From Macrostomum lignano (lineage: Eukaryota): 64,000 nt of DNA. A program made the position numbers and the translations under genes. The stretch lies in the NCBI GenBank assembly GCA_002269645.1, contig NIVC01000012.1, positions 1,364,001 through 1,428,000 of the forward strand, written 5' to 3'. Of this stretch, positions 3,590-50,100 are shown in pieces. The notes beneath the pieces are model-generated. The model worked only from the letters and a program-made list of their open reading frames with translations. It did no database searches and was not told where the DNA came from. How positions within the stretch are numbered: the stretch's first letter is position 1; the number at the start of each line of letters is the position of its first letter.

Positions 3590-5706
3590 GTAGAGCCCTG
3601 CTGCTGGATGACTTACACAACGCACCGCGAGACTCAAGAGACTCTAACAATCCTTGACCGGCTGGATCTTGACACGGACAAATTAGCACCGGAGGATCTA
3701 TACAAGAAATTCGGCCTGGAGGACGAATACGAAAATAATGAACTGAATCTTTGGCAGAAGGTGAAGCCAAAGTTGTGGGCACTGTTTGACGAGCCCTATT
3801 CGTCGGTAGCAGCGAAGGTGAGCACAGAGTGCACGGACTGAGGTTGGTAGAGTGCACTAATTAAAGTTGGTGAAGTGCAAGACTTGAGGTGGGGAGAGAA
3901 CACGAATCGAGGTGGGTAGAGTGCACAAATTGAAGTGGGTAGAGTGCACAAATTGAAGTGGGTAGAATGCACGAGTTGAAGTGGGTAGAATGCACGATTT
4001 GAGGTGGGTAGAGTGCACAAATTGTGGTGGGTAGAGTGCACGAATTGAGGTGGGTGAGTTAAAAATACCCAATTTATTGCAAGATCCGACAATAAGGAGT
4101 CTGCTGCACATATACTCTCAAACTATATACTTCTCACAGATAGTCGCAGTCGTATCCGTGTTCTTCATCGTCATCAGCATCCTGTCCTTCTGCCTGAAGA
4201 CATTCCCGGGCCTTCGAGTTCCAATAATCACCAATGTGACAGTTGTTGTGGACAACAATGACACAATGTCCTATGCTCTGTACAAAACCCGCTCCGAGCC
4301 GCACTCGGCCTTTTTCTACATTGAATGCGTCTGCAACTCCTGGTTCACATTCGAGATTGTCACTCGGTTCTCTGTGACGCCGGACAAATTCGAGTTTCTC
4401 AAATCGCCAGTTAACATTATCGATTTTATTGCCACGCTGTCATTCTACATGGACCTGGTGCTGAATCAGGTCCTGTCTGAGGCTGAAGCCAGCTACGAAG
4501 TTCTGGAATTCTTTTCTATTATTCGAATTATGCGGTTATTTAAGCTCACCAGGTAAGTCATTGAGATTGCTTGCGAGGATCCTGGCGACATTGTCCATTT
4601 TGCATAGTTTTGACAAGTTGAACGCAGGGTCAAGAAATAAATATTATGCCCTGCACCACTGAGACCCCAATTTACAAATTTTAGCTTATTTACAGTACGT
4701 AGAATAATTTTACTGCAGCTCAACTAACCCGTCATTTTTCGCAGACATATCGCCGGCCTGAAGATACTCATCCACACGTTCAAGGCCTCGGCCAAGGAGC
4801 TGTTGCTGCTAGTCTTTTTCCTAATAGTCTTCATAGTGGTATTCGCGGCGCTAATCTACTACGCGGAGAGAATACATTACAATCCGGAAAATTCATTCGA
4901 TTCTATTCCTATCGGCTTGTGGTGGGCCATTGTCACCATGACAACGGTTGGCTACGGAGATATGGCGCCAAAGACTTACGCGGGTAAGTTGTGTGTGCCT
5001 GGCTGAAATTTACAATAGTAGCTCGTGTCATTATCTTCACGTAATTTAAGAAGGTTCAGGTGCGTAGTAAAGAGCACAAGAACTAGTGTGCAAATCTGGG
5101 ACTTTGAGGTGATTGTAAGCCACACAATCTTGCGCACAGAGATACGTACGTGCTGGAGCGCACACTCACACGGATTTACTCATACTCGGGAGATGCATAC
5201 ACAAACACTTCGAAATGGGATTGGTTTCCTTGAGCGTGTGAATCATACGTCAAGCACCACGTCGATTTTCTTGCACGAGCCTCAAAATTGGAAAGAATTG
5301 TGCCGCGCAGTCTACGCGCAATTTAGTTAGTATTTGTATGCCTTCATCGAAAGCGTTCGAAACAATACTGTAATAATTTATTACACTTCAAAAACACCTT
5401 CCAATCTCCATCTAGGTATGTTCGTCGGAGCTCTGTGCGCGCTCACTGGTGTGCTCACCATCGCTCTGCCAGTCCCGGTGATCGTGTCCAACTTCTCCAT
5501 GTTCTACTCGCACACCCAGGCCCGGAGCAAGCTGCCAAAGAAGCGCCGTCGAGTGCTACCAGTCGAAGCTGTCAGGCCGAAAGTCGCCGGAACGGTACCC
5601 GGCAGCGGCCTGCTGAAAGGTGCCGGCGGTGCCGGCGGCAACGCGAGACGATTCAACGCCATGAAGTCTGGCCCAGGGTTGTTGGACTCCAAGCTCAATC
5701 GGCTTG
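3590..5706 (+). CDS. Shaw: Shaw/Kv3 voltage-gated K+ channel, core exons 3590-3817, 4140-4552, 4745-4983, 5416-5706 (5'-partial; T1 domain exon not found in window)
   Basis: VEPCCWMTY end of T1, [11 protein letters not shown] pre-S1, S4 [12 protein letters not shown], pore TMTTVGYGD and S6 [14 protein letters not shown] boundaries have consistent phases (0, 2, 1). Confidence 0.96.
3845..4055. repeat. ~24-bp degenerate minisatellite (GGGTAGAGTGCACAAATTGAAGTG) in Shaw intron
   Basis: About 8 tandem units inside intron 3818-4139. Confidence 0.9.
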
Positions 5707-14404: not shown

Positions 14405-17400
14405 ATGGAGCTGAGCACCAAATCAATTAGCGAGTTCATCTCATCCACAACAGCTCATGGCTTCAGTCGACTGCATCCTTCGCAGTCATTCCCGATCAAA
14501 TGCATGTGGTTGGCCTTTCTATTGACCAGCGTTGGCGGATTCAGCTACCACATCACACTGCTGATCACTAACTACCTCAGCACGCCGGTGTCCGCCAACA
14601 TCAGCCCCGGAGCGATACCGTTCGATACCCCGGACATCACCGTCTGCAATGTTAGTCCCATATCGTCAACAAACTATTATGAAACGGTCACTAAGCACTA
14701 CGATGTGTACATGCGACTGCTATCGGAGGCCTATTCGACTCAGAGCGTAGTTGAAAGTCACGGATTTGGCTACAACACCGACATCCTCATGCAGGTGTCT
14801 CGGGACATGTTCGATTCTTCCCTGCTGCTGCGGTACCTCGGCCATCGACGCGAATACTTCATTGTCCGGTGCCGCTACAAGGGCCAAGAATGCAGCTACG
14901 CCAACTTTCAGAATTTCTGGGACAGCCAGTTTGGCAATTGTTTCCGATTTCAACCGTCTGAGGCGCTGTTGAATGCGACCAGAGATGTGGCTGAGTTTCA
15001 ACTTGAGCTGGTGAGGTTCCCGTCAAAGTCTATTCTTGGGAACAATTCTAACATTTTAATATTTTAGACACTGAAGCTCGGAGGTATTTACTTCGGGCTG
15101 CATTCTGACGTTTAAAATCATACTCCACTTCAATTTGTCGGATTTTTTCCACAAGGTTCTGTTCACGGACACCAACCCAGTCGTGACGCATCCGTACAGC
15201 ATGGAGGTCTACCGCATGCTGACTGCTGGCGTCACATTTGAAGGCGAATACGACGTGTCGAAATCTGGCGGAGCTATTCTATTCTACGGCGATAAGGACC
15301 ACTATCCCAGGGACTATATCAATCTGTCGCCCGGTGTCCATTCCTATGTGGACTTTCAAATGGTTGAGCACAGGTGAGTTATCACGTCTGTTTATTTTTC
15401 ACGTTAATTATAGCATTTTAAGACTTATAGGCTAAAGTGTCTGACTCTGGCACCACGACTCTAAGTTTGGTTATACGTATGAGCGTAGGTACACGGCTAT
15501 ATTAATTTGGGTATTGCGCTCGAGCGGTTATCGTTAGACTCACACTCATCAGGGCCAACACCCAGGTCACATAGGGGTCGTACTATAAAGCTGTCGTAGC
15601 GTAAGTTCGATCGTACGTCGGAACTATTACACTAGGGAGATGGGAGCTAAGAACGATCTTATCTTACGATGGCTTTAAACGGGTCCATAGAACGGGTCCA
15701 TAGAATTAGAACGGGTCCATAGTGTACATGCTTGATTGCGTACCTGCATACAGTTACCGCGCGCTTGCAAGTGCTCAGTAGTCAGCAGAATGGGCAGAAT
15801 TGCCTCGGCGCTGGTTCAGTTGAGCAATGTGGCCAAAGCCGTAGCGCGAGGGCTCCCGCAATATCATTTACTATAAGTCACATTTTACATGTAAAAGTCC
15901 TTTAGAAAAACGTGCCCTTCTTTCTTTAGCTCGAAGGAGATCATTTTATTGTACTTAGATAGCACAAATATCGAAGCGTGAGTTGGCCGGCTGGCTTGAG
16001 GTCATTTGCACTCGTATATTGCGCAAATCGGTAGTTATTTAAGAAGAAAATGTTCCGTCACAAATGCAGTCGTTTTCTTTTGTTTAAAATGGGTTATGAA
16101 ATAAAACTCGTCTCCAAACGCTAAAAGCAACTGTAGCAAACGAATCAAATTTCACAAAATATAGATTGACAGTTTTAATTTTATTTGCTTCACTGACGAC
16201 AATAGCCGGCTAAAGTTTCAATCCAGAGTCAGCCAGTGGGCATCTTTTATAAGCTTGCAGTCTTGCACAGGATTCAAAGTTTACCATGGAAACGGGCTAT
16301 TAGTGATTTTGTGAGTTGTTGAAAGTTGAAGGGATTCATTAATCCATGAATTTTCTTTAGAAAAATTACACTTCTATTCAGTTTCCGATAGACTCACAAA
16401 TGTATTTGAATTCAAAAGGCATCTACGATTCCAAGCATTTGTTAAACGTGAACTGTAAGATAAAACTTCTTTGAACTAAAACTTGATTGAATTTTGCGAT
16501 CGAAATCAAACGATAATCCGTTGTCATGACTCATTTTAAAGCCAAAAGCCAAAGTTGCAGAGGATCGTTTCAATAACTGAGTAATTTACAGTATTTTGCC
16601 TTTTAAGCTAGCATAGAATGAAATGGATTAGATCAACTTCATGTAAAACTTTGCGATTTATACTTTAACACTTTATTCTTTATAAAAATCTTTTATGGCA
16701 AAAAACGGTCCTTATCGTCACCACGCCAACAAATACAGGTACGTCAGTCGCAACTCAAAGGTCTGTATAGAAGACAGCGGAATCGCCTACTACGAAGACT
16801 CGGACAGGAATCGAATAAAGTTTCGAAAAAACCGGATTGACTGTCAGTACCGGACACTTTTGGAGAAAATAATGGCCGACTGCGACTGTTTCTCGACCAG
16901 AATAGCGCCGCCGTACGTCAACCTCACTGAGACGTTTACTAAAACGCGTTGTCAGTACTTTGTTGCTGAAACTAGTACGGCCGATTTCTTGAAGCGACGC
17001 AACTGCGAACGCGACGCCATCCTGAAGAAGAGCAGCTACTTTAACACCATGACAAAATGCTTACCCAACTGCGCTGAGCGAATCTACACCCCGGTCATAT
17101 CCATGACCTCCTGGCCGCTAAACAGCTTGGCCGTCAGTTGCAAGAACAGCATAATGAACCAGACTATTGGTAATCTATTGGCTCACAACGTTACTCCACC
17201 GGATACGTTTTATTACTTTTTACGCAACATAACAACGCCACCGGAGGTGCAGAGAGATTTTTCAACAAATTTCGCGCAAGTAAGCCTCGGCGAGTACACA
17301 GACTTCAGCACACTGATGGAGGAGGTGCCGTCTTACCTGATCTTTGACCTGTTCTCCAGCATTGGTGGCATCCTGGGTCTTTATCTGGGAATGTCGCTAC

Positions 17401-17780
17401 TGACTGTTTGCGAACTGTTTGAGCTGCTCTTCGTGTTGATTGGTGAGCTCCGCACAGCGGCCAGGGGCCTTCGGACTCGACGCCAGTGGCGCAGCCATCA
17501 GGCGCCCGGCAGCTTCAATAGCAGCGACGCCGGCAGCGCTGTCATGAGCGTCAGCTCGGAGCACACTGTGGTGGCAGCCGTAGCTATCAAGACGGACATC
17601 ACTGCCAGCAATGGACAAGCAAAGCAGAAGGACCCGAAGCAAACATCAAATTTCGCACCGGGTCGTCCAGCGCGAGTGGCTCCTGTCACTCCAGCCACGA
17701 CCGGACCGAAGAGAACTATAACGGTGCCTCGGCCGCCCCTGACAGTATCGTCAGCGCACCGCGGTGGCAAAGCCTGGTGA
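14405..17780 (+). CDS. DEG/ENaC (amiloride-sensitive Na+ channel family) subunit A; join(14405..15010,15156..15373,16739..17780), 621 aa
   Basis: TTAHG pre-TM1 motif, PDITVCN, FGNCFRF, Cys-rich thumb (DCDC, CLPNC), TM2 FSSIGGILGLYLGMSLLT. Splice phases 0 and 2 give a continuous ORF of 1866 nt. Confidence 0.94.
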
Positions 17781-18770: not shown

Positions 18771-20480
18771 TTACGAACCATCGGCTTGTACGGTAGCAGG
18801 CCTGCGTCCTAGGACCATATAGACGCATAGCTCAATGATTTCCAGCTGAGATAGCAGGCTGGCGCCAATAAACAAACTAATTAGGCCGCCAACTTCCACT
18901 GTCAAATCGAATAATTTATAACTAACAGACTGCTCAACCTCGGTAGAGGACAACTCTCCGGCTTGAATCTGAACTCGCAAAAAATTCTCCGATACTGCGC
19001 GAATCATTGCGTCTTCGGCCGCAGCCGAACCGGAAGCACTCTCATTGAACAGTTGAATCATCCAGTCCCGGCCGGGGGTGGACTGGTTCCCACCCGACAG
19101 CCTGACAGAGGATGCCGATAGCAGCTGGCTGAACTCGGATTGAAGTGATTTCTTCAAAGGAGACTTAATCGAAGACAATTTCGCTTTGTAGACTGCCTCT
19201 TTGCAGGAGTACTTGTTTTGGCAAATAGTCTGAACTTCCTGCATAAACTGGCTTGTTTCCTTGGTTAGCTGGCCATTGGTTATCTTTTTCATGAATACTA
19301 ATATCTTTAAAATCTCCGAGTCGCTTGCATTAGGTCCGATTTGGCTGAAGTTGTAAATATTTGGCAGATCCTTTTGCGAATATGGGATTGGCAGCATTCC
19401 TGGCAGATTAGCTTCCAGGTTGGTCGCATAGATGTTGGCTAGTTCCTTAGCGTAGCAGGCTGAAAATTAAATAGAATACTTGCGTATTTTGACTTTCAAT
19501 TTCAAATTCTACTATTGAGCATTCTTTGTCTCACCATACAGATTGTACCGATAGCTTCCTGGCTCTGCTTTCGCCAGATCAACGTATTGAACATTTGGCT
19601 GATCGCTGAGACATTGTCCCTTCTTCTCCGCCCAGTTTGTCACCTGCATGCTCAGCTTGATGTAGTGCGTGTACCCTGGAGCTATCGTCACCGAAGGCGA
19701 GAACTCATCCGGATAACCGTGCTTCGGAGTAAAGTACACCCGGAATCCAGATCCCAACAGGTTTTCGTAGCCAGTGAATGACAGTCCACGGGATTCGATG
19801 TGGCCGTCGTAAAATTTTACGGACTGGTTGTAGGTTGCGTCAGCGTACAGAAAGATATCCATATAAGCTAACACATTACCCAGCATTCTTTGTATATCAT
19901 TCTGCTTCGGTCTGACTCTAAAACAATTAAGGTATTTATAATGCCCAAAGCTCTCAATGTCTTTATCAAATTCAAGCTCAACGTTCATCGGCATGACAGT
20001 CGCCTTCACTATCGACTGCTCCTTTCGCATTCCGAAATTCTCGCTCAGAAAGCTTGTGGGAAGCGTGTTCACCAGGGCTACGGCTACGAAATATGGGTGG
20101 GACGCGTTGAATCTGTCCAACAGCTGAACAATCTTGGCCGTCTGCGCATCTGTGAAGTTTCTGGCTTCTGCTCCCATTGTTGAGGGATAGCTGGCAGAGA
20201 TCATCGGTTGCGAGCAAAAGTGAACGTCGGGGAACTCGAAGGTGGCAGAATTCGGCTCAATAGAAGTAGACACTGGTAGGCTGCGCAGTTTTATCACGGC
20301 CATGACAAACTGCCGGGTCAAGAAGCCAACAAAGGCTATGAATGCCAGGAGCCAGAGCGCCTTCACTGCCGGATGTCTGTCGCCAACTGTGCGCGGAATG
20401 CCGTGAATGGTGGTGTCGGACGCGCTCTCTTCCAAAATCTGCTTGCGCTGGCTGCGGTCTGTGTCTTTTGATGACGTCAT
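18771..20480 (-). CDS. DEG/ENaC subunit B; complement(join(18771..19459,19535..20480)), 544 aa
   Basis: TTIHG motif, FPDVHFC, YLNCFRV, TM2 VEVGGLISLFIGASLLS. A 75-nt phase-1 GT-AG intron joins the two ORFs (1635 nt). First ATG at 20480. Confidence 0.93.
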
Positions 20481-21224
20481 TCTAGTGTATTTTTTCAATG
20501 ACAAATTTTAGGTGCATATTACACTCGTAGTTTACTGAATGAAAATGGGCCTCGATTCTAAGCTGGTTCCAGCTAATTATATGGGCCGCCGTTTGCTGAG
20601 GTTATCGATGCCCAATCGGGCAGGAGAGTCGAGAGAGGGCGACGTAGGTTGGTAGAGAGTCCGGCAGGCAGTTTCCAATAATGGTTTCCAATAGTAACTG
20701 CACCTGAGCTAACTTCTCCTTTGTTGACACAAGGCTCACTAGAGGCTTAGCGGACACAGCTCTGCGAAACCTATAGGCAAACAGAGCTGATTTTTTTCTC
20801 CCAAAAATCCAAACCAACCACTTAATAGGATTATGGGAAACAGTCGCCACTCTCTGCAAAGGACTGTTGTGATAATTGGATTAACTTGCTGATTAACTGC
20901 GCTAAGGTTATGGCTTTGCCAACTCATCTGATCGCAGTTGCAGCGTTGCTACTGCATATACGTAGTTCTGATTTGGTAATAATCAATGAAAAAGACGATT
21001 GTGATTTGTGATGCCTATCAACGTAATATTTCCGACTAGCTCAACCTACCTGTACGAAGCTACATATAAGTAGTATGAATCGATTTTATTGCACTAATAA
21101 CGAGAATGATTGAAATTGAACTTAGGTAGATTTCCTTCCGAGTTTATTTTCCTAATTACATAAATAAAAAGCCAATCGATAATGGACTAAAGGAAGTATT
21201 ACAGAAATATATTAGAGGAAGGGG

Positions 21225-26184: not shown

Positions 26185-26900
26185 CTAAAACACCACGAGG
26201 CACTCGCAAATGTACTTCGTCTGTTCACCGCATTCCGAATCATTTATTCCAATTCGATGAGAGCGGTAAATATTTACACAGTCCTGATTGCCATTCTGAT
26301 TGTTTGGCTGTTTCGGCTCCCAAACGTCGGCTCGGATGCTCTCGTTGCATGCGTCCCAGATCCAGCCTGCTGTGCTGATTCCCGAGCCTGGGATCAGGTG
26401 GCCTCCAAGGTATAAGCCATTACCTACTTCCGACACGTTCTTGATCCACACCAGATGGCGAGACTCGTCGGTGTCTAGAGTGTCCGCGAACTTCGACAGT
26501 CCAGCCTCCTGACCGCACTTCTCCTTGGCGTCCAACCAGTTAGCCGCGGCCGAGGCTGACACCTTGTAGGCGGTGCCGAATCGAGCGAACTCGTATCCGG
26601 GAGGACACAAGCGACCCGCCGCTACTCCGGCCATTGATCTCACGTACACGGTCACCAGGTGAGCACAGTTAGGCACTGACTGTACTCGGTGACTGCACTT
26701 GTCGAACAGGCAGCGTGAAGGCCTGGCACTTGGGAGTCTTGGCGCAGAGAAAGCTGCAGGACAGCTGTTTGCATAACCCCAGCACAATCTTAGTGAACTC
26801 AGGGCGAACGCAGTCAGCTCCTGACGTTTTTCTGAACGATACTTTTGCATTCGGGCATGTGCTAGACTGTTTCGAAGGCGTAACTATCAGCTGCTGCAGC
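26185..26900 (-). pseudogene. Lectin copy 3 with a 29-bp frameshifting deletion and a divergent N-terminus
   Basis: Relative to copy 1, AACAGCTTGCAGACACAGTCGCCAGCGGG is missing at 26710/26711. The CTLD is intact to CECLVVF*. The N-terminus of the 221-aa ORF in the track is out of frame. Confidence 0.82.
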
Positions 26901-38100: not shown

Positions 38101-41100
38101 AATCTCATGGAAATAGACACATGAGAATATTAATCTCATAGAAATAGACACACGAGAATCTTAATCTCATGGAAATAGACACATGAGAATATTAATCTCA
38201 TAGAAATAGACACATGAGAATCTTAATCTCATAGAAATAGACACATGAGAATATTAATCTCATAGAAATAGACACATGAGAATCTTAATCTCATGGAAAT
38301 AGACACATGAGAATCTTAATCTCATGGAAATAGACACATGAGAATCTTAATCTCATGGAAATAGACACATGAGAATATTAATCTCATGGAAATAGACACA
38401 TGAGAATATTAATCTCATGGAAATAGACACATGAGAATCTTAATCTCATGGAAATAGACACATGAGAATCACACCTCAATGGATCAGGCTTAATGGAAAT
38501 TAAAGTTCCAGCTAAAAAATCATAAATAATGAATTAATTAATAAGTGAGAATCTGACCAAAGCAGAGCAAACAGGAAAAGTTCCGAAAGCCCGTACCGCC
38601 ACCAATAGATAAACAATTGACCGGAAATCCGGCAGAACCCGGCGTCGAATCGAACATGTCAGTCGGCTTACGTCGCTCGCGTAAAGATCTCTGGCCAAAA
38701 CTTCGACGACCAAGTACGCCTGCTACTGGCTTGGACGTCGCCGCTAGGTTGAAGCAGCCTCCTTCGACATCGTTTGTTGCTAACCAGGGTTGGCCAGCGA
38801 CTCCTTGGCTGTAATGACATGAAATTCATGTAATTAATTATATAAATTTTTAGGCAATTGTTGATTGTTATAATTTGATACTTGCTAAGTTCAGAGCTAT
38901 AATGCAAATAGATGAGAGATGGGTGAGATTTCCAATCCAAAACTCTATGGGTCAGATTCGCAGCTCATCTAAGTCTATGGATGAGATTCCCAGCTCACCT
39001 AAAATCTAGAGGGGTGAGATTCCCAGCTCCCCTAAATATATGGGTGAGATTCCCTACCCTTAAATCTATGGGCGAGATGGATTATGATTAGATAAGAGAT
39101 TACAGTTGAAAAATTAAATAGATCCGAGTACTTATATCTAAACAGGTAGATGAAAGCTAGATTAAAAGTACATTCGGTAAAGAAATCTGGATAAGTACAT
39201 CAATCAGTTAGACTAAAATTGCGGAGCTAAAATTGTCTACTAATAAATTTTCTGTCTCAATAAGCTAATTAGCTAACTGAAAGTCTAAAACAGTTTGGGG
39301 CATCAAAGAAAAGTACATCTGCGCTAGTTAAAGTCTGGGCGGCAATCCGCTAAACCCCGTTACAGTTTCGAGACAAAAAGCTGGTTTCGATCGAAGCTAA
39401 ACGTCGCCTTAAACTCCCGGATTGGCAGAAGGCTTTACAAGGAGGGGTTGGGGTGGCACAGAAGCAGAACGCTTGCAGCGGCAAAAGAAGAAGAAAAAGA
39501 GAAAAAATGCAACAAGAAGCCACTAGCGCAGACAAATAAAGGCTTAGGGGAACAAAAATAAATGGGGATATTGGGGGGGGGGGCCTCGAGCTAGCTAAAT
39601 ACTGTTTGACAGAAAAATTCGGACAGTTGGCATTCAGCCGTCCTTGGCAACAACTTTGTAACCTTCCTCAAGCCGAAGCCTTGATATTCCTGTATACAGA
39701 TGGTATTCCCCACTTGCCCCGGGCGAACGTCTATGGTCTTAGTGTAAATTTCATATATACTATAGCTTGGCCATAGACTATCGCTGCCTATTTAACACAC
39801 TCAGCTAAAAAAGTAATTACGAATTAATTACCCCTGCTGCTGATGTTGCAGTTTTTGCATTAGCAATTGTTGCAGGTTGTCCACTGAGCAGGAGCCTCGA
39901 TGGCTGAGCTGGGCAGGGCCGACTCCAGATGAAGTCTTTGCTGACGTCTTTGTTGGAGACTGGAAAGACTGAAATGTGCTGAGCGGCCAGCCACTGTTGT
40001 TCGGCTGCAATGCGAGAGGGGAGGGCAGGCCTTTGAAAACGCTATAAAAATGCATGCAGTCTTCACCCTGGCAGTGGGTTCTGTTACTCCCGATAAATAT
40101 TTGGCGGTACCCAGCTACTGACACTCTGAGAGACTGGCGGTACCCAGCAACTGAGGATCTTAAAGGGTGGCCCAGCAACTGAGGATCTTAGAGGCTGGCC
40201 CAGCAACTGAGGATCTTAGAGGCTGGCCCAGCAACTGAGGATCTGAGAGGCTGGCCCAGCAACTGAGAGGCTGGCCCAGCAACTGAGGATCTTAAAGGGT
40301 GGCCCAGCAACCGAGGATCTTAGAGGCTGGCCCAGCAACCGAGGATCTTAGAGGCTGGCCCAGCAACTGAGGATCTGGGAGGCTGGCCCAGCAACTGAGA
40401 ACCTGGGAGGCTGGCCCAGCAACTGACACTCTGGGAGGCTGGCCCAAAAACGGAGGATTTGGAAGGTCGGTGGTTGAAGAGGCGGAGACAATGGTCAGGC
40501 GGAGTCGAAACGAAGTTGCAACAACAAGCAAACAACTTTGACAGTCTTCAACAGCTGCAAAAATACTCCCGAGGGAAGAACAGCCGCCTACAGTAGTAGC
40601 AATATATAATTTTTATCTGTCGCGCTTGCTTATTGACAGCCAGCCAGTAATGACTGTCTCTCTCTCTCTCTCACTGTCTCTACCCTTCGCCATCTCAATC
40701 TACACAGCTACAGAGCCCCTATTTACTGTGCCGAAATTCCCTACCCAGTGGACTTGACTGCGGGGCCTGTTTGGGCGAGTCCAGTTGCTCGAACTCCACC
40801 CTGCGCTCCTTAATTTGATAATGGAGCACCGCCTCACGCGCCGAGATTTCTGCACTGGCCAACCTAGCCAGTATATCCCCTTATTCAAGCATATATATGT
40901 ACTCGTATGATCTAGCAATGCGGAGTCCAATGCCAATATATATGAATATACAAGTCAACAAAAGTCCTATCTAAATCCTACATTAAGAAACCATCGTATC
41001 CGCAATAATAATTGATTGATCAGGCGAGGTCGCGACCTCAATAAATTAACAGTTCCGTGTCTGTATCGTGCCCTAACCTGAGAAGATATTTGGTTATTTT

Positions 41101-44100
41101 TAGTCTAGCATCAGCTATATGAGTTAAAACCCTTCCCATGGCTTTACATATGTTTTAAAAGTCTTCAAAAGCACACACACAAGTATATGTGGTTCATGAT
41201 AATCATGATAAGGTGAGTCATGATCCACCTCACAGGATCTATAGCTGTGACTCATGACCTACTTCACTACTAACCGTGAGTCATGACCAGCCTCACAACA
41301 AACCGTGAGTCATGACCCGCCTCACAACAAACTGTGAGTCATGACCACCCGCCTCACAACAAACTGTGAGTCATGACCACCCGCCTCACAACAAACCGTG
41401 AGTCATGACCCGCCTCACAACAAACCGTGAGTCATGACCATCATCACAACTAACCGTGAGTCATGACCCGCTTCACAACAAACCGTGAGTCATGACCCGC
41501 CTCACAACAAACCGTGAGTCATGACCAGCCTCACAACTAACCGTGAGTCATGACCCGCCTCACAACAAACCGTGAGTCATGACCAGCCTCACAACTAACC
41601 GTGAGTCATGACCCGCCTCACAACTAACCGTGAGTCATGACCCGCCTCACAACAAACCGTGAGTCATGACCCGCCTCACAACAAACCGTGAGTCATGACC
41701 CGCCTCACAACAAACCGTGAGTCATGACCCGCCTCACAACAAACCGTGAGTCATGACCAGCCTCACAACAAACCGTGAGTCATGACCCGCCTCACAACTA
41801 ACCGTGAGTCATGACCCGCCTCACAACAAACCGTGAGTCATGACCCGCCTCACAACTAACCGTGAGTCATGACCCGCCTCACAACTAACCGTGAGTCATG
41901 ACCCGCCTCACAACTAACCGTGAGTCATGACCCGCCTCACAACTAACCGTGAGTCATGACCCGCCTCACAACTAACCGTGAGTCATGACCAGCCTCACAA
42001 CTAACCGGGAGTCATGACACTCCAGCAGGTGGCCACATACCGATATCAGCATCCCGTGACCCTGCTGGACGTTCTCGTCCGGTGAACCGCCAGGCCCGCT
42101 AGCGGCGATGTTCAAGCGGCCAAATCCGTCCTCTGACACGGTAGACATTGCCGCAGCTTCAGCTGGTGGATTCAACGAAGCAGGCAGCTGGTGTACATCT
42201 GCGCTAACTGTCACACTACCGCTGCTGCTGATACTGTCGGCTGCTGGCTGATGTTGATGCTGATGCATAGCCTGATTCCGTGGATGAGGCAGTTGCCTAG
42301 CAACCACTAGACGAACTCGACCACCTGTGGACCCGTGTCGAATAGCTCGCCTAAGCGTTGCCATGGCCTCGGCTCCGGCGATGCCTTCCAGCGAGCAGCC
42401 ATTCACTGACAGCAGCTGGTCCGACTCGCGGAGTCGGCCGTCCTGGTTTTGGGGAGTAGGGTGAACCGGGGAAGTTACCAGATTAACAGATGAAGTGACC
42501 AGCATACGGGTGTTTATAAGGCTAAATGGCAACATGGGAGAGGATACTGACTAGCAGGGGTAAGACACAAGGTAGCAGGTTAGAGACGCAGGGTAACAGG
42601 AAAGATACAGGGGAACAGGGAAGACACAGGGGAACAGGGGAAGACACAGGATAGCAGGGGAGGACACAGGGGAACAGGGGAAGACACGGGGGAACAATGG
42701 AAGGCACAGGGGAACAGAGGAAGACACAGGGGAACAGGGGAAGACACAGGGAACAGGGGAAGACACGGGGGAACAGGGGAAGACACAGGGGAACAGGGGA
42801 AGACACAGGAGACAGGGGAAGACACAGGAGAACAGGAGAAGACGCAGGGGAACAGGGGAGGACACATGGGGAACAGGGGAAGACACGGGGGAACAGGGGA
42901 AGACAGGGTAAAAAGAGAAGACACAGGAGAACAGGAGAAGACGCAGGGGAACAGGGGAAGACACGGGGGAACAGGGGAAGGAACAGGGAAAAGAATTTCT
43001 TATACCCTATGGGCGGCTCCGCCAGAAATGACAGTCCGCACAAAAACGCCCGCCCCATTGCAGCCGGCCATTTTGTCCGCGCCGCCGCCGCCGCCGCCGC
43101 CGCCGTCTTGGCCGACTTCATCGCCCGTGCGGATGCTGACGCCGAGACCTCCGCCGCCGCCTCCACCTCCGCCTCCGCCGCCCCCGGCTTCAACAGCCAG
43201 CGGAATGTCCAGCTCCAGAAGACAGCGGTCCACAGAAAGAAATTTCGACGCTCCGGTGGCAGCAGCTGCCGTTGATGAAGATCGCGGATCGCCAGAATTG
43301 TCAGAGTTGGCCGAATTTGGCTGCAAAAAGTCAGATGAGTTGAATCTGTTCAACCCACTGTCCGCCCCATGACTGTGCGTTGAACAGGAACCCAGGATCG
43401 ACAGGAACGCAGGAATTTCGATCCCAAATTCAGGGGCTTAAATGATCCCGAATCCAGGGATTTTGATGATCCCGAATCCAGGGATTCTGATGATCCCGAA
43501 TCCAGGGATTTTTATGATCCCGAATCCAGGGATTTCGATGATCCCGAATCCAGGGATTTCGATGATCCCGAATCCAGGGATTTCGATGATCCCGAATCCG
43601 GGGATTTTGATGATCCTGAATCTAGGGATTTGGTGATCCCGAATCCAGGGATTTCGATGATCCCGAATCCAGGGATTTCGATGATCCCGAATCCAGGGAT
43701 TTCGATGATCCCGAATCCAGGGATTTCGATGATCCCGAATCCAGGGATTTCAGTGATCCCGAATCCAAGGATTTCGGTGATCCCGAATCCAGGGATTTCG
43801 GTGATCCCGAATCTATCCGAATCCAAAGATTTTGATGATTCCGAATCCATGGACTTCAATCTCAAATCCTTGGACTTCAATCCCAAATCCATGGACTTCA
43901 ATCCCGAATCCATGGACTTCAATCCCAAATGGACTTCAATCCCGAATCCATGGACTTCAATCCCAAATGGACTTCAATCCCGAATCCATGGACTTCAATC
44001 CCGAATCCAGGGACTTCAATGTCGAATCCATGGACTTCAATCCCAAATGGACTTCAATTCCGAATCCAGGGACTTCAATCCCAAATGGACTTCAATTCCG

Positions 44101-47100
44101 AATCCAGGGACTTCAATCCCGAATCAACCGATAGACAGGAAGTTATTTTAAGAACTCCGCCGTCCCATTTGTGTATGTATCTTTCTAGATATTTCTCGGA
44201 AGATATTGAAAGGAAAAAATCCTCCCCCCACAACTCGTGTGGGCGTCTTACGGCATAGAGCTGGTCCATGCATATTATTCCATATTTAATATGTTATATA
44301 TATATATACGGATAGATTTACAAGCGCAGACTCCAGCCAGAGTCCCAGCTTAAACTGCCCAGAGACTAGGCTCAGAAGTATAGGGGGGGGGGGGTTGCGG
44401 GGGATGGCGCTTCTGCCTCAAAACATCTGCCGCAGTTCCCTGGAGAGCTGCTCTGTCCCTATGGGTATAGTGCTATTCAGTCTAAACTAACTCCTTGCTC
44501 AGCCTTTGCATTAATGATTGTCCATGATGACGTATATAAATAAATATGACGTAAGTGAAGTGAAACACTTTTTGTGATGTGAGAGCTATAGATATAGCGA
44601 ATTCGTGCAGTAAATGGTTCTAAAGTTATGACGCTAGAATCATGTAAATGACGCTAGAATCATGTAAATGACGCTAGAATCATGTAAATGACGCTAGAAT
44701 CATGTAAATGACGCTAGAATCATGTAAATGACGCTAGAATCATGTAAATGACGCTAGAATCATGTAAATGACGCTAGAATCATGTAAATGACGCTAGAAT
44801 CATGTAAATGACGCTAGAATCATGTAAATGACGCTAGAATCATGTAAATGACGCTAGAATCATGTAAATGACGCTGGAACCATGTAAATGACTCTACAAT
44901 AATGTATATGATTCTAAAGTCATGTAAACGATGCTAAAATCATGTGAATGATGCTACGGTCATGTAAATGACGGTAAAATTATGTATATTACTCTAGAAT
45001 AATGTAAATAACTCGAAAATCATTTAAATGACGCTAGAATCATGTAAATGACGCTAGAATCATGTAAATGATTTTAGAATCATGTAAATGACGCTAGAAT
45101 CATGTAAATGACGTTAGAATTATGTATATTACTCTAGAATAATGTAAATAACACGAAAATAATGTAAATAATGCTAAAGTCATGTATTTGGTTCTAAAAT
45201 CATGTAAATTATTCTAAGTTCATGTAAATAATGTTCAAATTATGTAACTGATACTGAAACATATAACTATAGCCTTAAGACTATGCCAATGACCGCCTAA
45301 AAAATTAAACGAATTTAGAATATCGGCTATTCGTATCCGATTTGGGTGGGGACTGGGGGATCAGAACGCAGTGTGGGAAGTACATTGGCTTAGACCAACT
45401 AGCTGGAGTCGATTAACGGGCATCCAGCGCTTATATTTTTTGCTTTCTCCACTATCAATGAGTATCAATGGGTTGCAGTATTGGGACTGCAATTTCCCTG
45501 TGTCGTTCACTTCGAGAGCCTATAGCTATACACTATGGATCATCCTAGTGAACCTCGGCTACTAACTAGCTAACCAGAACAAGAGACGCTAATAGGGGAG
45601 AGGAACAGGAAGGAAGCGGAGTAGCTCGTAGGCAGTGGCTTATAAGCAGAGAAAATGAGAGCAGTTTTAGGGCTACGATAGGGGGTGACTTCTGCTTGAT
45701 TATTTCTGGCACGAGACTGCGATTCCCATTAGACCGCCAGCTATCTGCGTGTAGTCAAACTGAGTCTGCACTTTACTGTCCTTTGTGCAGTACTCTAGTG
45801 CCGACACACTCACTGTGTCAGAGGCGTTTGCGTATAATGATCACTCCTTTGTTTTACAATCAATGCCAACTGGAACTTAATGAGGCAACAAATGAAAATA
45901 GTTCTTGACAAAGACAATGATATCAAATTGTTTTCTAAGCTTGCAGTTTTAAGGGCAGTTTGGAGAGGAGAGGAGAGGAGAGGAGAGAATAGGAGAGGAG
46001 AGGAGAGGAGAGGAGAGGAGAGGAGAGGAGAGGACAGGAGAGGGGAGGAGAGGAGAGGAGAGGAGAGGAGTGGAGAGAAGAGGAGAGGAGAGGAGAGGAG
46101 AGGAGAGGAGAGGAGAGGAGAGGAGAGGAGAGGAGAGGAGAGGACAGGAGTGGAGAGGAGAGGAGAGGAGAGGAGAGGAGAGGAGAGGAGAGGAGAGGAG
46201 AGGAGAGGAGAGGACAGGAGAGGACAGGAGAGGGAGAGGAGAGGAGAGGAGAGGAGAGGAGTGGAGAGGAGAGGAGAGGAGAGGAGAGGAGAGGAGAGGA
46301 GAGGAGAGGAGAGGATAGGACAGGATAGGATAGGATAGGATAGGAGAGGAGAGGAGAGGAGAGGAGAGGAGAGGAGAGGAGAGGAGAGGAGAGGACAGGA
46401 GAGGGGAGAGGAGAGGAGAGGAGAGGAGAGGAGTGGAGAGGAGAGGAGAGGAGAGGAGAGGAGAGGAGAGGAGAGGAGAGGAGAGGAGAGGAGAGGACAG
46501 GAGTGGAGAGGAGAGGAGAGGAGAGGAGAGGAGAGGAGAGGAGAGGAGAGGAGAGGAGAGGAGAGGACAGGAGAGGACAGGAGAGGGAGAGGAGAGGAGA
46601 GGAGAGGAGAGGAGTGGAGAGGAGAGGAGAGGAGAGGAGAGGAGAGGAGTGGAGAGGAGAGGAGAGGAGAGGAGAGGAGAGGAGAGAGAGGAGAGGAGAG
46701 GAGAGGAGAGGAGAGGAGAGGAGAGGAGAGGATAGGACAGGATAGGATAGGATAGGATAGGAGAGGAGAGGAGAGGATAGGATAGGATAGGAGAGGAGAG
46801 GAGAGGAGAGGAGAGGAGAGGAGAGGAGAGGAGAGGAGAGGAGAGGACAGGAGAGGGGAGAGGAGAGGAGAGGAGAGGAGAGGAGTGGAGAGGACAGGAC
46901 AGGATAGGATAGGATAGGAGAGGAGAGGAGAGGAGAGGAGAGGAGAGGAGAGGAGAGGAGAGGAGAGGAGAGGAGAGGAGAGGACAGGAGAGGGGAGAGG
47001 AGAGGAGAGGAGAGGAGAGGAGTGGAGAGGACAGGACAGGATAGGATAGGATAGGAGAGGAGAGGAGAGGAGAGGAGAGGAGAGGAGAGGAGAGGAGAGG

Positions 47101-50100
47101 AGAGGAGAGGAGAGGAGAGGAGAGGAGAGGAGAGGAGAGGAGAGGAGAGGAGAGGAGAGGAGAGGAGAGGAGAGGAGAGGAGAGGAGATGAGAGGAGAGG
47201 AGAGGAGAGGAGAGGAGAGGAGAGGATAGGATAGGAAAGGAGAGGAGAGGAGAGGAGAGGAGAGGAGAGGAGAGGAGAGGAGAGGAGAGGACAGGAGAGG
47301 GGAGAGGAGAGGAGAGGAGAGGAGAGGAGTGGAGAGGACAGGACAGGATAGGATAGGATAGGATAGGATAGGATAGGATAGGATAGGATAGGAGAGGAGA
47401 GGAGAGGAGAGGAGAGGAGAGGAGAGGAGAGGAGAGGAGAGGAGAGGAGAGGAGAGGATAAGATAGGATAGGACAGGATAGGATAGGACAGGATAGGACA
47501 GGATAGGATAGGATAGGACAGGATAGGATAGGATAGGACAGGATAGGATAGGATAGGACAGGATAGGACAGGATAGGATAGGACAGGACAGGACAGGACA
47601 GGATAGGAGAGGAGAGGAGAGGAGAGGAGAGGAGAAGAGAGGAGAGGAGAGGAGAGGAGAGGAGAGGAGAGAAGAGGAGAGGAGAGGAGAGGAGAGGAGA
47701 GGAGAGGAGAGGAGAGGAGAGGAGAGGAGAGGAGAGGAGAGGAGAGGAGAGGAGAGGAGAGGAGAGGAGAGGAGAGGAGAGGAGAGGAGAGGAGAGGAGA
47801 GGAGAGGAGAAGAGAGGAGAGGAGAGGAGAGGAGAGGAGAGGAGAGGAGAGGAGAGGAGAGGAGAGGAGAGGAGAGGAGAGGAGAGGAGAGGAGTGGAGA
47901 GAAGAGGAGAGGAGAGGAGAGGAGAGAAGAGGAGAGGAGAGGAGAGGAGAGGAGAGGAGAGGAGAGGAGAGGAGAGGAGAGGAGAGGAGAGGAGAGGAGA
48001 GGAGAGGAGAGGAGAGGAGAGGAGAGGAGAGGAGAGGAGAGGAGAGGAGAGGAGAGGAGAGGAGAGGAGAGGAGAGGAGAGGAGAGGAGATGAGAGGAGA
48101 GGAGAGGAGAGGAGAGGAGAGGAGAGGAGATGAGAGGAGATGAGAGGAGAGGAGAGGAGAGGAGAGGAGAGGAGAGGAGAGGAGAGGATAGGACAGGATA
48201 GGATAGGACAGGATAGGATAGGATAGGACAGGATAGGATAGGAGAGGAGAGGAGAGGATAGGATAGGATAGGAGAGGAGAGGAGTGGAGAGAAGAGGAGA
48301 GGAGAGGAGAGGAGAGGAGAGGAGAGGAGAGGAGAGGAGAGGAGAGGAGAGGAGAGGAGAGGAGAGGAGAGGAGAGGAGAGGAGAGGAGAGGACAGGAAA
48401 GGAAAGGACAGGCGTGGCGAGGTGACCAGTAGAGAGAGTTGCTACAAAATAAACCAGAGGGAATCCAGAGACAAACGCCAACCGAAAGAAGCGGGGCTTA
48501 GGCCGTAGAACGAGTCAGACTGAGGAAAAGCAGTACATGGGAAAGTATCGAGAGCAGATAAAGTGCATGGCTACTCAATCTGCAGTCAGTAAGCATCTGT
48601 TAGCCCAGCATTGGCAGCTCTGCAGCCCCTGGGAAGGCGAGAGACACCAACCAGTCGACAGGCAAGCAGCCTAGAAAATTCTTGGTCAATAAGATCGATG
48701 CTTAGCCAGACACTCGAACGGATAGAGTATCGCTATGGATGTGTGCGGTGAGTGCTTAACGCTTCAACGCCTGTAGCTATTGGCAAATGCAGTGTGTAGC
48801 CATCTAAGTGCTGTTATTTATTAGTTTTTTGCTGCTGTGAGGCGAGATTTTTATCTTAATAGCTTTACTATTCATACGAGCGTACGTGTGTACTTAGCCA
48901 TCCAAAATTAATTTGAGCGCTAAAGTTGTACGTTCTCAGGATGAAACATATCAGAGTGACACAATTGACAGTGAAATATTTGCACAGAGTGAAGCATCTT
49001 TTAAGGTTGAAAACTCACGTCAAGGAATCCGAGACGCGAAGCTCCCTGGCCAAGATGATTAAGTGCGGCGCTTGCGGCCACCGCGCCAGACGAAGTGGTC
49101 GCCAGTAGACCGCCGCCAGCGGCAACTTCGACAATGGCGCTGTCGCAAACATCGTCAACGTCCGGTACGTCGTCTTGGCCCTCGGTCAGACGGCGGGACA
49201 CGAGTATTTTAACGGTGGCACCGACTGGGATCGCCCTCAACAGACTGACAGCATCAGCCTGGCTCTGTCCAGTCAGCCTGTAGCCGTCGACCTCCAGGAT
49301 TCGATCCCCGGCCTTCAGTCGGCCGTCGCGAACGGCTGAACCGCGACCGAGCACGGCTTTGACGTAGATTCGATTCTGATGGCGACGACGCGGCTTGTGA
49401 TTGCTGGCGTCGTTGCCATGGCTACCAGTATCATTGTCGTCATTATTGGCAGTAGTACTATTAGCTCCAACGTCTCTATCGCCACCGCCGCCGCTGTTGT
49501 TATTATTGTTGTCGTTAACCGACATCGACGAGGTTGGACGCGATTCGTCAGCTGACGACAATTCAGAAGATGATGACGAAGGTGAACCAGCAACGGCGGA
49601 GGCCGCGCTGTCTGTGACGGAGAAGCCCAGTCCTTCTGCTGATTTGCAAATGTCGACGGCTAACACTTTGCGGCGTCGGCGACGTCGTCCGCTTGCGAAT
49701 GCTCGCTGATGTGGCCGCTGCTGCGGTTGAGCAACCTGCTGCTGAGGCGAGAGCGGGCGAGCTGCAGAGCAACTGGAGGCGTCTGCAGCTTCAGCAGCGG
49801 CGGGGGCGGCAGCGACAGCAGCGGAAGAAGAATCTTGATCGAAGCCCTCGGCCGAGACGGTAGGGGACGTCGCTGATACAGTTGGCGACTGAGCAGCGTT
49901 GGCTTGTTGGCCGCTTCTGCTGTTGCTACTAGAAGCAGGATTTCGCGGCAATAGACGCAACGTTATCATTGGAAAACGCGGCTGTTCCGCGTCTGTTGCC
50001 AGCATCTTTGATTTCATTTGCTGCTGCATCGCAGTCTGCTTTTGCTGCTGCCGACGCAGGGCTTCTCGAAGAACCTGTTGGGCTCTGAGGTTGGAAGTGC

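What the first reader, a model, noticed from the sequence alone, without database searches (positions are those of the whole stretch)
18771..20480. Cysteine-depleted DEG/ENaC: only 6 extracellular Cys versus the usual 14
Seen: the spliced ectodomain has exactly six Cys (HFC, LNC, GQC, YAC, TIC, YSC). Known: ASIC/ENaC ectodomains carry 7 conserved disulfides, 5 of them in the thumb. By position the survivors form three complete pairs (94-195, 291-366 and 309-362 equivalents); the other four pairs are lost, and the thumb is replaced by Cys-free sequence. The HG motif, GAS filter and ORF are intact. Inference: a functional channel with a rebuilt ligand- or mechano-sensing thumb, potentially a distinct subfamily.
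Basis: partly seen in the sequence, partly recalled or inferred. Interest (0 to 1): 0.72.

Follow-up and report, generated by a model that had tools for sequence, protein, structure and literature searches.

The report
Flatworm sodium-channel gene with few disulfides
This is an intact two-exon gene of the flatworm Macrostomum lignano for a DEG/ENaC-type sodium-channel subunit that keeps only three of the family's seven stabilising disulfide bonds, the extreme end of a stepwise loss seen across a group of flatworm paralogues.

Summary
On the minus strand, 20480..18771 encodes a 544-aa DEG/ENaC subunit: two exons, a 75-nt GT..AG intron, and a full-length Pfam ASC match (E 1.7e-38). It has exactly six ectodomain Cys. 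The organism is Macrostomum lignano; two database copies are 98-99% identical and carry the same Cys.

Aligned to rat ASIC1a, the survivors are C93-C194, C290-C365 and one alpha4-to-beta10-linker bond. Whether that third bond is the 309-362 or the 313-360 equivalent cannot be decided. No exon is missing.

The gene is not a one-off. It sits in a clade of M. lignano paralogues with 6-10 ectodomain Cys, plus relatives from one unidentified transcriptome. The whole clade lacks the 172-179 bond and one alpha4 bond. A thumb-tip bond was lost at least three separate times within it.

The thumb is not replaced. AlphaFold2 predicts a helical thumb that is longer than in ASIC1a. The closest solved structures are FMRFamide-gated channels (FaNaC).

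An unflagged oddity is Val at the "degenerin" position, unique among 152 relatives, which all but four have S/A/G/C. It suggests a channel biased towards the open state.

Function, expression and selection remain untested. I rate it a new variant of a known kind, of moderate interest.

The parts
18771..20480 (-). Whole coding span of the DEG/ENaC gene (544 aa plus stop)
   Evidence: Pfam ASC PF00858 E 1.7e-38, covering profile positions 3-455 of 455.
19535..20480 (-). Exon 1 (946 nt; Met1 to the first base of codon 316)
   Evidence: ATG at 20480; donor TATG|GTGAGA. Junction peptide NLYACYAKE is also present in the independent models P0001 and P0164.
19460..19534 (-). Intron, 75 nt, GT..AG, phase 1
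   Evidence: Reading exon 1 on in frame into the intron meets a stop (ORF 19512..20504). The alignment to paralogues is colinear across the junction.
18771..19459 (-). Exon 2 (689 nt including TAA stop at 18771-18773)
   Evidence: Acceptor TTTTCAG|CC.
20400..20405 (-). HG motif (H26-G27) before TM1
   Evidence: Aligns with rat ASIC1a H28-G29.
20280..20372 (-). TM1 (about residues 37-67)
   Evidence: AlphaFold2 helix 37-67.
20214..20216 (-). Cys89 (FPDVHFC), equivalent to rat ASIC1a C93 / chicken C94
19923..19925 (-). Cys186 (YLNCF), equivalent to rat C194 / chicken C195; canonical partner of Cys89
   Evidence: invariant in clade alignment A1.
19203..19613 (-). Thumb module, Cys290 to Cys401 (interrupted by the intron). 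Contains Cys290, Cys317, Cys395 and Cys401 and no other Cys.
   Evidence: AlphaFold2 helices 314-330, 362-376 and 379-394, with pLDDT block means 70-94 over residues 311-400. Cys mapping; coordinates.
18897..18899 (-). Val503 (codon GTG) at the degenerin (DEG) position, equivalent to rat ASIC1a G431
   Evidence: It is the only Val among 152 aligned family members.
18858..18866 (-). G514-A515-S516 selectivity-filter motif in TM2
   Evidence: Aligns with rat G442-A443-S444.
18813..18914 (-). Pre-TM2 and TM2 helices (about residues 498-531)
   Evidence: AlphaFold2 helices 498-514 and 517-531.

Best explanation
The locus is a real, intact gene of Macrostomum lignano, or a very close relative. It encodes a DEG/ENaC channel subunit from a lineage-specific group of paralogues in which the ectodomain disulfide set has been pared down step by step.

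Shown:
- The whole clade lacks the finger/beta-ball bond (rat ASIC1a C172-C179) and one of the two alpha4-to-beta10-linker bonds.
- The two thumb-tip bonds (321-343 and 323-335 types) are kept in some members and lost in others. The 323-335-type bond was lost at least three independent times.
- This gene is the minimal state. It keeps the post-TM1 palm/beta-ball bond (C89-C186), the thumb-base/wrist bond (C290-C401) and one alpha4/alpha5 clamp (C317-C395).
- The thumb persists as a helical module enlarged by about 27 residues. Several lost Cys positions now hold aliphatic residues (A160, V167, L330, A332, I350). The ectodomain has seven N-glycosylation sequons.

Inferred:
- The subunit still folds and assembles into a trimeric Na+-permeable channel, because HG, FPxxxxC, the GAS filter and both TM helices are intact.
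- Packing and glycans substitute for the lost cross-links, giving a more mobile thumb.
- Val503 at the degenerin position is a bulky residue where 148 of 152 relatives have S/A/G/C. It would bias the channel towards the open state, giving leak-like behaviour, rather than strict ligand gating.

The natural stimulus is unknown.
For: - Gene model and Cys positions.
- Pfam ASC, full length.
- Organism and near-identical copies with the same Cys and the same splice junction: P0001 98% and P0164 99%, the latter with 4 of 4 differences conservative.
- Paralogue clade in M. lignano with 6-10 ectodomain Cys.
- The six Cys are invariant or nearly so in clade alignment A1.
- Mapping to rat ASIC1a, whose sequence was taken from the supplement of PMC9234716.
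- NJ tree: (query, P0003) 100%, (P0004, P0005, P0007, P0158) 99%, (P0006, P0010) 100%. The 323-335-type pair is present in P0003, P0004 and P0005 only.
- Cys are lost as partners. If six of fourteen Cys survived at random, three complete pairs would be left with p = 0.012.
- AlphaFold2 model, pLDDT 80, pTM 0.76, with a helical thumb.
- Foldseek top hits are FaNaC 7yvb, 7yvc and 8on7-8ona (TM-score normalised to the query 0.60-0.70, probability 1.0).
- Clade profile against the PDB: FaNaC E 6.7e-48 versus ASIC1 5e-27.
- DEG position census, S83/A36/G16/C13/T2/N1/V1.
[quoted passage not shown] Ten thumb Cys are more than 90% conserved in all 31 fly PPKs (PMC3583452). Bulky residues at the DEG site alter gating, e.g. 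ASIC2 G430V (PMC6827283; PMC2231819 abstract).
Against: - There is no expression or cDNA evidence for this gene. No exact product of either exon ORF is on record, and the spliced product could not be looked up.
- The 90% cluster holds only two predicted UniRef proteins and no NCBI or transcript-derived member, whereas several paralogues do have NCBI entries.
- No dN/dS could be computed for this gene. The one close pair of 6-Cys paralogue CDSs I retrieved has no substitutions.
- Disulfide connectivity is inferred from alignment only.
- Val503 differs from Ala (GCG) by a single CpG transition, so it could be a recent private mutation or a sign of relaxed constraint. The near-identical copies are truncated before this site.
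Confidence: 0.7

Rival explanations
1. The gene is a recently relaxed or dying duplicate. In a genome with many DEG/ENaC paralogues and near-identical extra copies, this copy would no longer be under selection, and the low Cys count plus the odd Val at the DEG site would be early decay rather than design.
For: - Val503 is unique among 152 relatives and is reachable by one CpG transition.
- No transcript-derived or NCBI-annotated protein exists for this gene or its sister P0003/P0002, unlike other paralogues.
- At least three near-identical copies exist.
- No dN/dS is available.
Against: - The 1635-nt ORF is intact, with canonical splice sites and all pore and gate motifs.
- The 6-Cys state is shared with the 98-99% copies, and also with distant, separately evolving paralogues (P0007 cluster, P0006/P0010), so Cys loss long predates this copy.
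- All 4 differences from P0164 over 461 aa are conservative.
- Cys were lost in partner pairs, leaving none unpaired.
Confidence: 0.17
2. The low Cys count is a gene-model artefact: a Cys-rich exon has been missed, so the true protein has the usual cysteines.
For: The model rests on sequence only. The intron falls right at the start of the thumb, just before Cys317.
Against: - The spliced protein aligns colinearly, without a gap at the junction, to 12 full-length relatives and to rat ASIC1a.
- The Pfam match runs end to end.
- Two independent database models use the same junction.
- The intron is only 75 nt, and the exon-1 frame read into it meets a stop.
- The thumb is already longer than in ASIC1a.
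Confidence: 0.02
3. The protein is an obligate heteromeric or modulatory subunit. It would form no channel alone and would tune channels built from Cys-richer subunits, perhaps other clade members or the adjacent gene.
For: - DEG/ENaCs commonly work as heterotrimers (established knowledge; ENaC alpha-beta-gamma, PMC10178586).
- Many paralogues coexist in M. lignano.
- A second DEG/ENaC gene lies tail-to-tail about 1 kb away.
- Three other M. lignano DEG/ENaCs gave no peptide-evoked currents in oocytes, alone or combined (PMC9234716).
Against: - Nothing in the sequence distinguishes an accessory subunit from a pore-forming one; the filter and both TM helices are canonical.
- The neighbour is only about 24% identical over the aligned parts and groups outside the clade, so adjacency may be coincidental.
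Confidence: 0.15

Closest known systems
FMRFamide-gated Na+ channels (FaNaC; Aplysia 7yvb/7yvc, Malacoceros FaNaC1 8on7-8ona)
   Same: These are the best sequence-profile and fold matches. The clade profile scores E 6.7e-48 over its full length. Foldseek gives E about 1e-22 to 1e-20 and query-normalised TM-score 0.60-0.70. The architecture is the same: HG, two TM helices, palm, thumb, finger and knuckle.
   Different: In the profile alignment, Aplysia FaNaC shows Cys at all the canonical thumb and finger positions: HCRFNREEC, FNCFTF, GNC, ACLQLC, ECKC and ECGCYQPC. This protein keeps six. Peptide gating is untested. Three other M. lignano relatives of the FaNaC branch did not respond to FMRFa-type peptides (PMC9234716). 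Identity to FaNaC is only 14-17%.
Acid-sensing ion channel 1 (chicken/rat/human ASIC1; 2qts, 6ave)
   Same: It shares the fold (Foldseek probability 1.0, query-normalised TM-score about 0.5). It also shares the GAS filter, the HG motif and the positions of three disulfides.
   Different: It lacks 4 of the 7 disulfides. It also lacks the proton-gating determinants: rat H73 aligns to P69, K211 to V203, Y71 to S67 and W287 to G288. The thumb is 27 residues longer.
Degenerin gain-of-function channels (C. elegans MEC-4(d) Ala713 to Val/Thr; ASIC2 G430V; ENaC DEG-site bulky substitutions)
   Same: A beta-branched bulky residue (Val503) sits at exactly the DEG position before TM2. In the known cases such substitutions hold the channel open (MEC-4 from my own knowledge; ASIC2 G430V from PMC6827283; ENaC from the PMC2231819 abstract).
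   Different: Here the Val is the wild-type residue of a genomic copy, not an induced mutation. Its effect in this background is untested, and whether it is fixed in the species is unknown.
M. lignano paralogues of the same clade (UniRef A0A1I8GGQ7 = P0003; PAA90405.1 = P0004; PAA81733.1 = P0005; A0A1I8GD92 = P0006; PAA58710.1 = P0007; PAA48052.1 = P0010)
   Same: They have the same six conserved Cys, the same absence of the 172-179 bond and of one alpha4 bond, and the same overall length and motifs. The P0007 cluster also has exactly six ectodomain Cys. P0010, which lacks its N-terminus including the post-TM1 Cys, counts six, and P0006 counts seven.
   Different: Identity to the query is only 19-41% in the clade alignment. 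P0003, P0004 and P0005 keep one more thumb bond. All have Ala or Ser at the DEG site. The intron position differs in P0007. The query and P0003 share an extra roughly 17-aa thumb insertion.
Drosophila pickpocket (PPK) family and ENaC cysteine-rich domains
   Same: They belong to the same superfamily, and both show large lineage-specific expansions.
   Different: All 31 PPKs keep ten thumb Cys at more than 90% conservation (PMC3583452). ENaC subunits have 8-9 disulfides (PMC10178586). This protein has two bonds in the thumb region and three in all.

Membership tests
DEG/ENaC superfamily (Pfam ASC, PF00858) | Full-length match to the ASC profile above the gathering score | tested here: met
   133.3 bits against a cut-off of 23.6; E 1.7e-38; residues 21-526 on profile positions 3-455 of 455.
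DEG/ENaC superfamily (Pfam ASC, PF00858) | Two transmembrane helices flanking a large ectodomain, with the fold of solved members | tested here: met
   AlphaFold2 helices 37-67 and 498-531; pLDDT 80, pTM 0.76. Foldseek probability 1.0 to FaNaC, ASIC and ENaC.
DEG/ENaC superfamily (Pfam ASC, PF00858) | HG motif before TM1 and FPxxxxC after TM1 | tested here: met
   H26-G27 align with rat H28-G29, and FPDVHFC ends at C89.
DEG/ENaC superfamily (Pfam ASC, PF00858) | G/S-x-S selectivity filter in TM2 | tested here: met
   G514-A515-S516 align with rat G442-A443-S444.
DEG/ENaC superfamily (Pfam ASC, PF00858) | Seven conserved ectodomain disulfides (14 Cys) | tested here: not met
   Only six of the canonical Cys columns are occupied. 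The 172, 179, 312, 321, 323, 335 and 343 columns and one of 359/361 are empty. This is a typical feature of the family rather than an obligatory one: 10-12-Cys members are common.
DEG/ENaC superfamily (Pfam ASC, PF00858) | Small residue (G/A/S/C) at the degenerin position | tested here: not met
   Val503; 148 of 152 aligned members have S, A, G or C.
DEG/ENaC superfamily (Pfam ASC, PF00858) | Trimeric, amiloride-sensitive, Na+-permeable channel | not testable with these tools
   This needs expression and electrophysiology; only a monomer model could be made.
FaNaC (peptide-gated branch) | Groups with FaNaCs and is gated by FMRFamide-type peptides | tested here: inconclusive
   FaNaC is the best solved match by profile and by fold. 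No phylogeny with FaNaC sequences was built, and peptide gating cannot be tested. Other M. lignano near-FaNaC genes were unresponsive (PMC9234716).
ASIC (proton-gated branch) | His73 and Lys211 proton-activation determinants and the Tyr71-Trp287 wrist-thumb pair (as listed in the bioRxiv version of the TadNaC2 paper) | tested here: not met
   The aligned residues are P69, V203, S67 and G288.

The most novel reading that the evidence does not exclude
This would be a naturally 'minimal-disulfide' DEG/ENaC that also carries a native degenerin-type Val at the gate. It would be a constitutively open Na+ leak channel whose thumb works without the disulfide ladder. The Macrostomum clade would then offer a graded natural series (10, 8 and 6 Cys, with repeated independent losses) for asking what the thumb disulfides are actually for.
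Probability: 0.15. Interest if true: 0.6.

Novelty: new variant of a known kind. Interest (0 to 1): 0.4.

Why it matters
Reviews treat the seven ectodomain disulfides as conserved throughout the DEG/ENaC family (PMC10178586). The ten thumb cysteines are more than 90% conserved across all fly PPKs (PMC3583452).

A clade that has shed four of the seven bonds, repeatedly and in partner pairs, while keeping every pore and gate motif, has two implications if the proteins are functional. First, only the post-TM1 bond, the thumb-base bond and one alpha4 clamp would be structurally indispensable. Second, the paralogue series is a ready-made natural mutagenesis set for thumb mechanics.

The wild-type Val at the degenerin position is a second testable oddity. 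If the gene turns out to be unexpressed or decaying, the finding reduces to ordinary divergence in a large, duplicated gene family.

Tried and rejected
- Missing Cys-rich exon: rejected, because the protein is colinear with 12 relatives and two independent models use the same junction.
- ASIC identity: rejected, because the proton-gating determinants are absent.
- The search for homologous proteins with the clade alignment returned only P0001, and with the C-terminal 144 aa returned nothing. I therefore could not check whether Val503 is shared by the near-identical copies.
- The look-up of encoding contigs failed for P0001 and for both exon ORFs, which are not on record. I therefore have no DNA of a close copy and no transcript evidence.
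- dN/dS on the 6-Cys paralogue pair P0007/P0156 was uninformative. The CDSs differ by one codon indel and no substitutions.
- The organism behind the five closest non-Macrostomum relatives could not be identified. The three traced, P0009, P0012 and P0016, all come from Logan run DRR639838, and no paper mentions that run. Further 8- to 12-Cys relatives come from unnamed Logan, ENA and JGI contigs.
- The three M. lignano channels tested by Dandamudi et al. are different genes from this one. By reading their cDNA sequences I judged them Cys-richer; I did not translate and count them.
- Literature searches for a described Cys-poor DEG/ENaC subgroup found none. The library is incomplete, so this is absence of evidence only.
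Full report
**What is at the coordinates.** The finding's span is exactly the coding span of a gene on the minus strand.
- The ATG is at 20480 and exon 1 runs to 19535.
- A 75-nt GT..AG intron follows (19534..19460, phase 1).
- Exon 2 runs from 19459 to the TAA stop at 18771-18773.
- The CDS is 1635 nt and encodes 544 aa.
- The protein matches Pfam ASC (amiloride-sensitive sodium channel, PF00858) end to end, with E 1.7e-38 and profile positions 3-455 of 455.

**The observation.** Cysteines lie at 89 (HFC), 186 (LNC), 290 (GQC), 317 (YAC), 395 (TIC) and 401 (YSC), with a seventh at 527 inside TM2. The count of six ectodomain Cys is therefore correct. The family motifs are present: HG (H26-G27), FPDVHFC after TM1, and G514-A515-S516 in TM2.

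**Is the gene model safe?**
- The junction peptide ...YRYNLY-A-CYAKEL... also appears in two independent database models from the same species. These are P0001 (98% identical, 373 aa) and P0164 (99%, 461 aa).
- The spliced protein aligns without a gap at the junction to 12 full-length relatives and to rat ASIC1a.
- The intron is short, and the exon-1 frame read into it meets a stop.
- A hidden Cys-rich exon is therefore very unlikely.

**Organism.** The best hits are UniRef proteins of the free-living flatworm Macrostomum lignano. All closest full-length relatives that carry a name are also M. lignano proteins.

**Which disulfides survive?** I took the rat ASIC1a sequence from the supplement of PMC9234716 and aligned it with the clade and with the neighbouring gene. 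I assumed the standard ASIC1 pairs, given here in rat numbering, which is chicken minus 1. The pairs are recalled from the chicken ASIC1 crystal-structure literature, not from a paper read here. They are 93-194, 172-179, 290-365, 308-361, 312-359, 321-343 and 323-335.

The mapping is C89 to C93, C186 to C194, C290 to C290, C317 to C308, C395 to C359 and C401 to C365.

Two pairs are clean: 93-194 and 290-365. The third is not. Both MAFFT and the HMMER profile alignment to chicken ASIC1 and to FaNaC put C395 on the 359/360 column rather than 361/362. Within the clade, the partner sits either 6 residues (most members) or 4 residues (P0007, and the neighbour gene) before the last Cys. The safe statement is that one alpha4-to-beta10-linker bond is kept. 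Which of the two ASIC1 bonds it corresponds to cannot be decided from sequence.

**Is six unusual?**
- Among 153 family members of at least 380 aa (the query, the neighbour, rat ASIC1a and the retrieved relatives), the ectodomain Cys count has a mode of 14 (52 proteins).
- Counts of 10-12 are common (38 proteins).
- Among full-length proteins, six is reached only by this gene, the M. lignano P0007 cluster and the N-truncated P0010. The one lower count, 4 in the 396-aa P0088, has no Cys in any thumb column and looks truncated.
- If six of fourteen Cys survived at random, three complete pairs would remain with p = 0.012. Across the clade, partners are present or absent together. Loss in pairs is what a protein that still has to fold oxidatively would show.

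**It is a clade, not a singleton.** An exhaustive HMMER search found 461 relatives at E up to 1e-3. The twelve closest full-length ones form alignment A1.
- In A1 the six Cys are invariant (186, 290, 317, 401) or nearly so (89, 395).
- Every member lacks the 172-179 bond and one alpha4 bond.
- A group of five proteins (P0009, P0011, P0012, P0013, P0016), at least three of them from one unidentified transcriptome (Logan run DRR639838), keeps both thumb-tip bonds, with about 10 canonical Cys.
- M. lignano P0002, P0003, P0004 and P0005 keep one thumb-tip bond (8 canonical Cys).
- The query, P0006/P0010, P0007 and P0158 keep none.
- In a bootstrapped NJ tree the query pairs with P0003 (100%), P0007/P0158 sit with P0004/P0005 (99%), and P0006 pairs with P0010 (100%). 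The 323-335-type bond was therefore lost at least three times independently.
- The tree is a simple distance tree. The deeper nodes are weak (49-66%), but the three relationships used here are strong.

**Structure.** AlphaFold2 with alignment A1 gives mean pLDDT 80 and pTM 0.76.
- It predicts TM1 (37-67), finger helices (98-148), palm and beta-ball strands, and a thumb made of helix 314-330 (starting at C317), a loop, and helices 362-376 and 379-394 (ending at C395).
- It then predicts beta10 (402-414), three knuckle-region helices, and TM2 (498-531).
- The thumb is thus retained and helical. It is 78 residues from C317 to C395, against 51 for the aligned rat span C308 to C359, partly through an insertion of about 17 residues shared only with P0003.
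- 'Replaced' or 'rebuilt' overstates this.
- Several lost Cys columns now hold aliphatic residues: A160, V167, L330, A332 and I350. The ectodomain has seven N-x-S/T sequons.

**Closest solved relatives.** Foldseek against the PDB ranks FMRFamide-gated channels first: Aplysia 7yvb/7yvc and Malacoceros 8on7-8ona, with TM-score normalised to the query 0.60-0.70. ASIC and ENaC follow at about 0.45-0.52. The clade profile agrees, with FaNaC at E 6.7e-48, ASIC1 at 5e-27 and beta-ENaC at 2e-26.

This fits Dandamudi et al. (PMC9234716), who placed M. lignano genes in a small branch next to the FaNaC branch. They found three of them unresponsive to FMRFa-type and W-amide peptides in oocytes. Those three (Mlig049925.g2, Mlig051885.g1, Mlig041003.g1) are different genes from this one, and from reading their cDNAs they look Cys-richer.

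The protein is not an ASIC. The positions of His73, Lys211, Tyr71 and Trp287 hold Pro, Val, Ser and Gly.

**An unflagged feature: the degenerin position.** The residue three before the GG that precedes TM2 (rat ASIC1a G431) is Val503 here. Among the 152 family members with a residue at this aligned position it is S (83), A (36), G (16) or C (13), with only T (2), N (1) and this single V as exceptions. All 12 clade relatives and the neighbour gene have A or S.

Bulky residues at this site are the classic gain-of-function 'd' mutations. Examples are MEC-4 Ala713 to Val/Thr (from my own knowledge), ASIC2 G430V (PMC6827283) and bulky side chains at the equivalent ENaC site (PMC2231819 abstract).

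The inference is that, if expressed, this subunit may favour an open, leak-like state.

There is a caveat. The codon is GTG, one CpG transition from GCG (Ala). The near-identical copies are truncated before this site. It may therefore be a recent private change.

**What could not be shown.**
- Expression: there is no transcript-derived protein for this gene in the searched collections. Its 90% cluster has only two predicted UniRef members, whereas several paralogues have NCBI entries. Exact look-ups of the exon ORFs failed.
- Selection: no DNA of a close copy was obtainable. The one close 6-Cys paralogue pair I could retrieve has no substitutions. The only hint of constraint is that all four differences from P0164 over 461 aa are conservative.
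- Channel activity, trimerisation and ligand are not testable here.

**Literature.** Reviews state that seven disulfides are conserved throughout ENaC/DEG. The two ENaC disease cysteines they discuss are C133 and C479 (bonded to C394). I equate these with the two clean bonds kept here, 93-194 and 290-365; that equivalence is my own reading of their described locations at the thumb/palm juncture, not a mapping made in the review (PMC10178586). All 31 Drosophila PPKs keep ten thumb Cys at more than 90% conservation (PMC3583452). In a Trichoplax-to-mammal alignment, 11 of 33 identical ectodomain positions are Cys (PMC6827283). I found no description of a Cys-poor subgroup. The searchable library is incomplete.

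**Verdict.** The gene belongs to an undescribed, Cys-reduced, FaNaC-related clade of flatworm DEG/ENaCs and represents its minimal state.

'Functional' and 'rebuilt sensing thumb' are not shown.

It is a new variant of a known kind, of moderate interest. Its value lies in the graded, repeatedly evolved loss of thumb disulfides and in the native Val at the degenerin site. Both can be tested directly by ordinary expression experiments.

Noticed in passing
window 18897-18899 (minus strand), codon 503 of the gene: Val (GTG) occupies the degenerin position, where 148 of 152 aligned family members have S, A, G or C and no other has Val. It is one CpG transition from Ala (GCG). It may mean a constitutively active channel or a recent private mutation.
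   Followed up: partly
window 14405-17780 (+): proposed exons 14405-15010, 15156-15373, 16739-17780: A second DEG/ENaC gene lies tail-to-tail with the focal gene, with about 1 kb between the stop codons. My provisional 621-aa model has 13 ectodomain Cys, including the 172-179 pair and four thumb bonds, Ser at the DEG site and a GMS filter. It is only about 24% identical to the focal gene over the aligned parts and groups outside its clade.
   Followed up: partly
window 45962-48412: A 2.45-kb pure (GGAGA)n microsatellite, about 488 copies at 93% match. It explains the extreme GC and AT skew in the composition profile and the spurious 848-aa 'ORF' on the minus strand.
   Followed up: yes
window 40143-45209: A field of at least six different minisatellite arrays, with periods 20, 20, 21, 24, 28 and 29 nt and up to 29 copies, lies just upstream of the microsatellite.
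   Followed up: no
window 4050-4556 (+), 26185-26850 (-), 49001-50029 (-): Other coding fragments in the window: an Ion_trans (voltage-gated-type cation channel) exon (E 1.8e-15), a C-type lectin domain (E 2.5e-5) and a PDZ domain (E 3.6e-9).
   Followed up: no
L004 6001-7807 and L005 6001-7804 (M. lignano GCA_002269645.1 contigs NIVC01002341.1 and NIVC01001696.1): The 6-Cys paralogue P0007 and its copy P0156 each have a single 88-nt intron after codon 456. That position differs from the focal gene's intron after codon 315. The two copies differ by one codon indel and no substitutions, and each is flanked by the same VWA-domain gene, so they look like very recent duplicates or haplotypes.
   Followed up: partly
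L001, L002, L003 (Logan run DRR639838): The closest non-Macrostomum relatives are five paralogues with about 10 canonical Cys. The three traced come from a single transcriptome-like run of unidentified organism. Further 8- to 12-Cys relatives come from unnamed Logan, ENA and JGI environmental contigs. The Cys-reduced lineage is therefore wider than M. lignano.
   Followed up: partly
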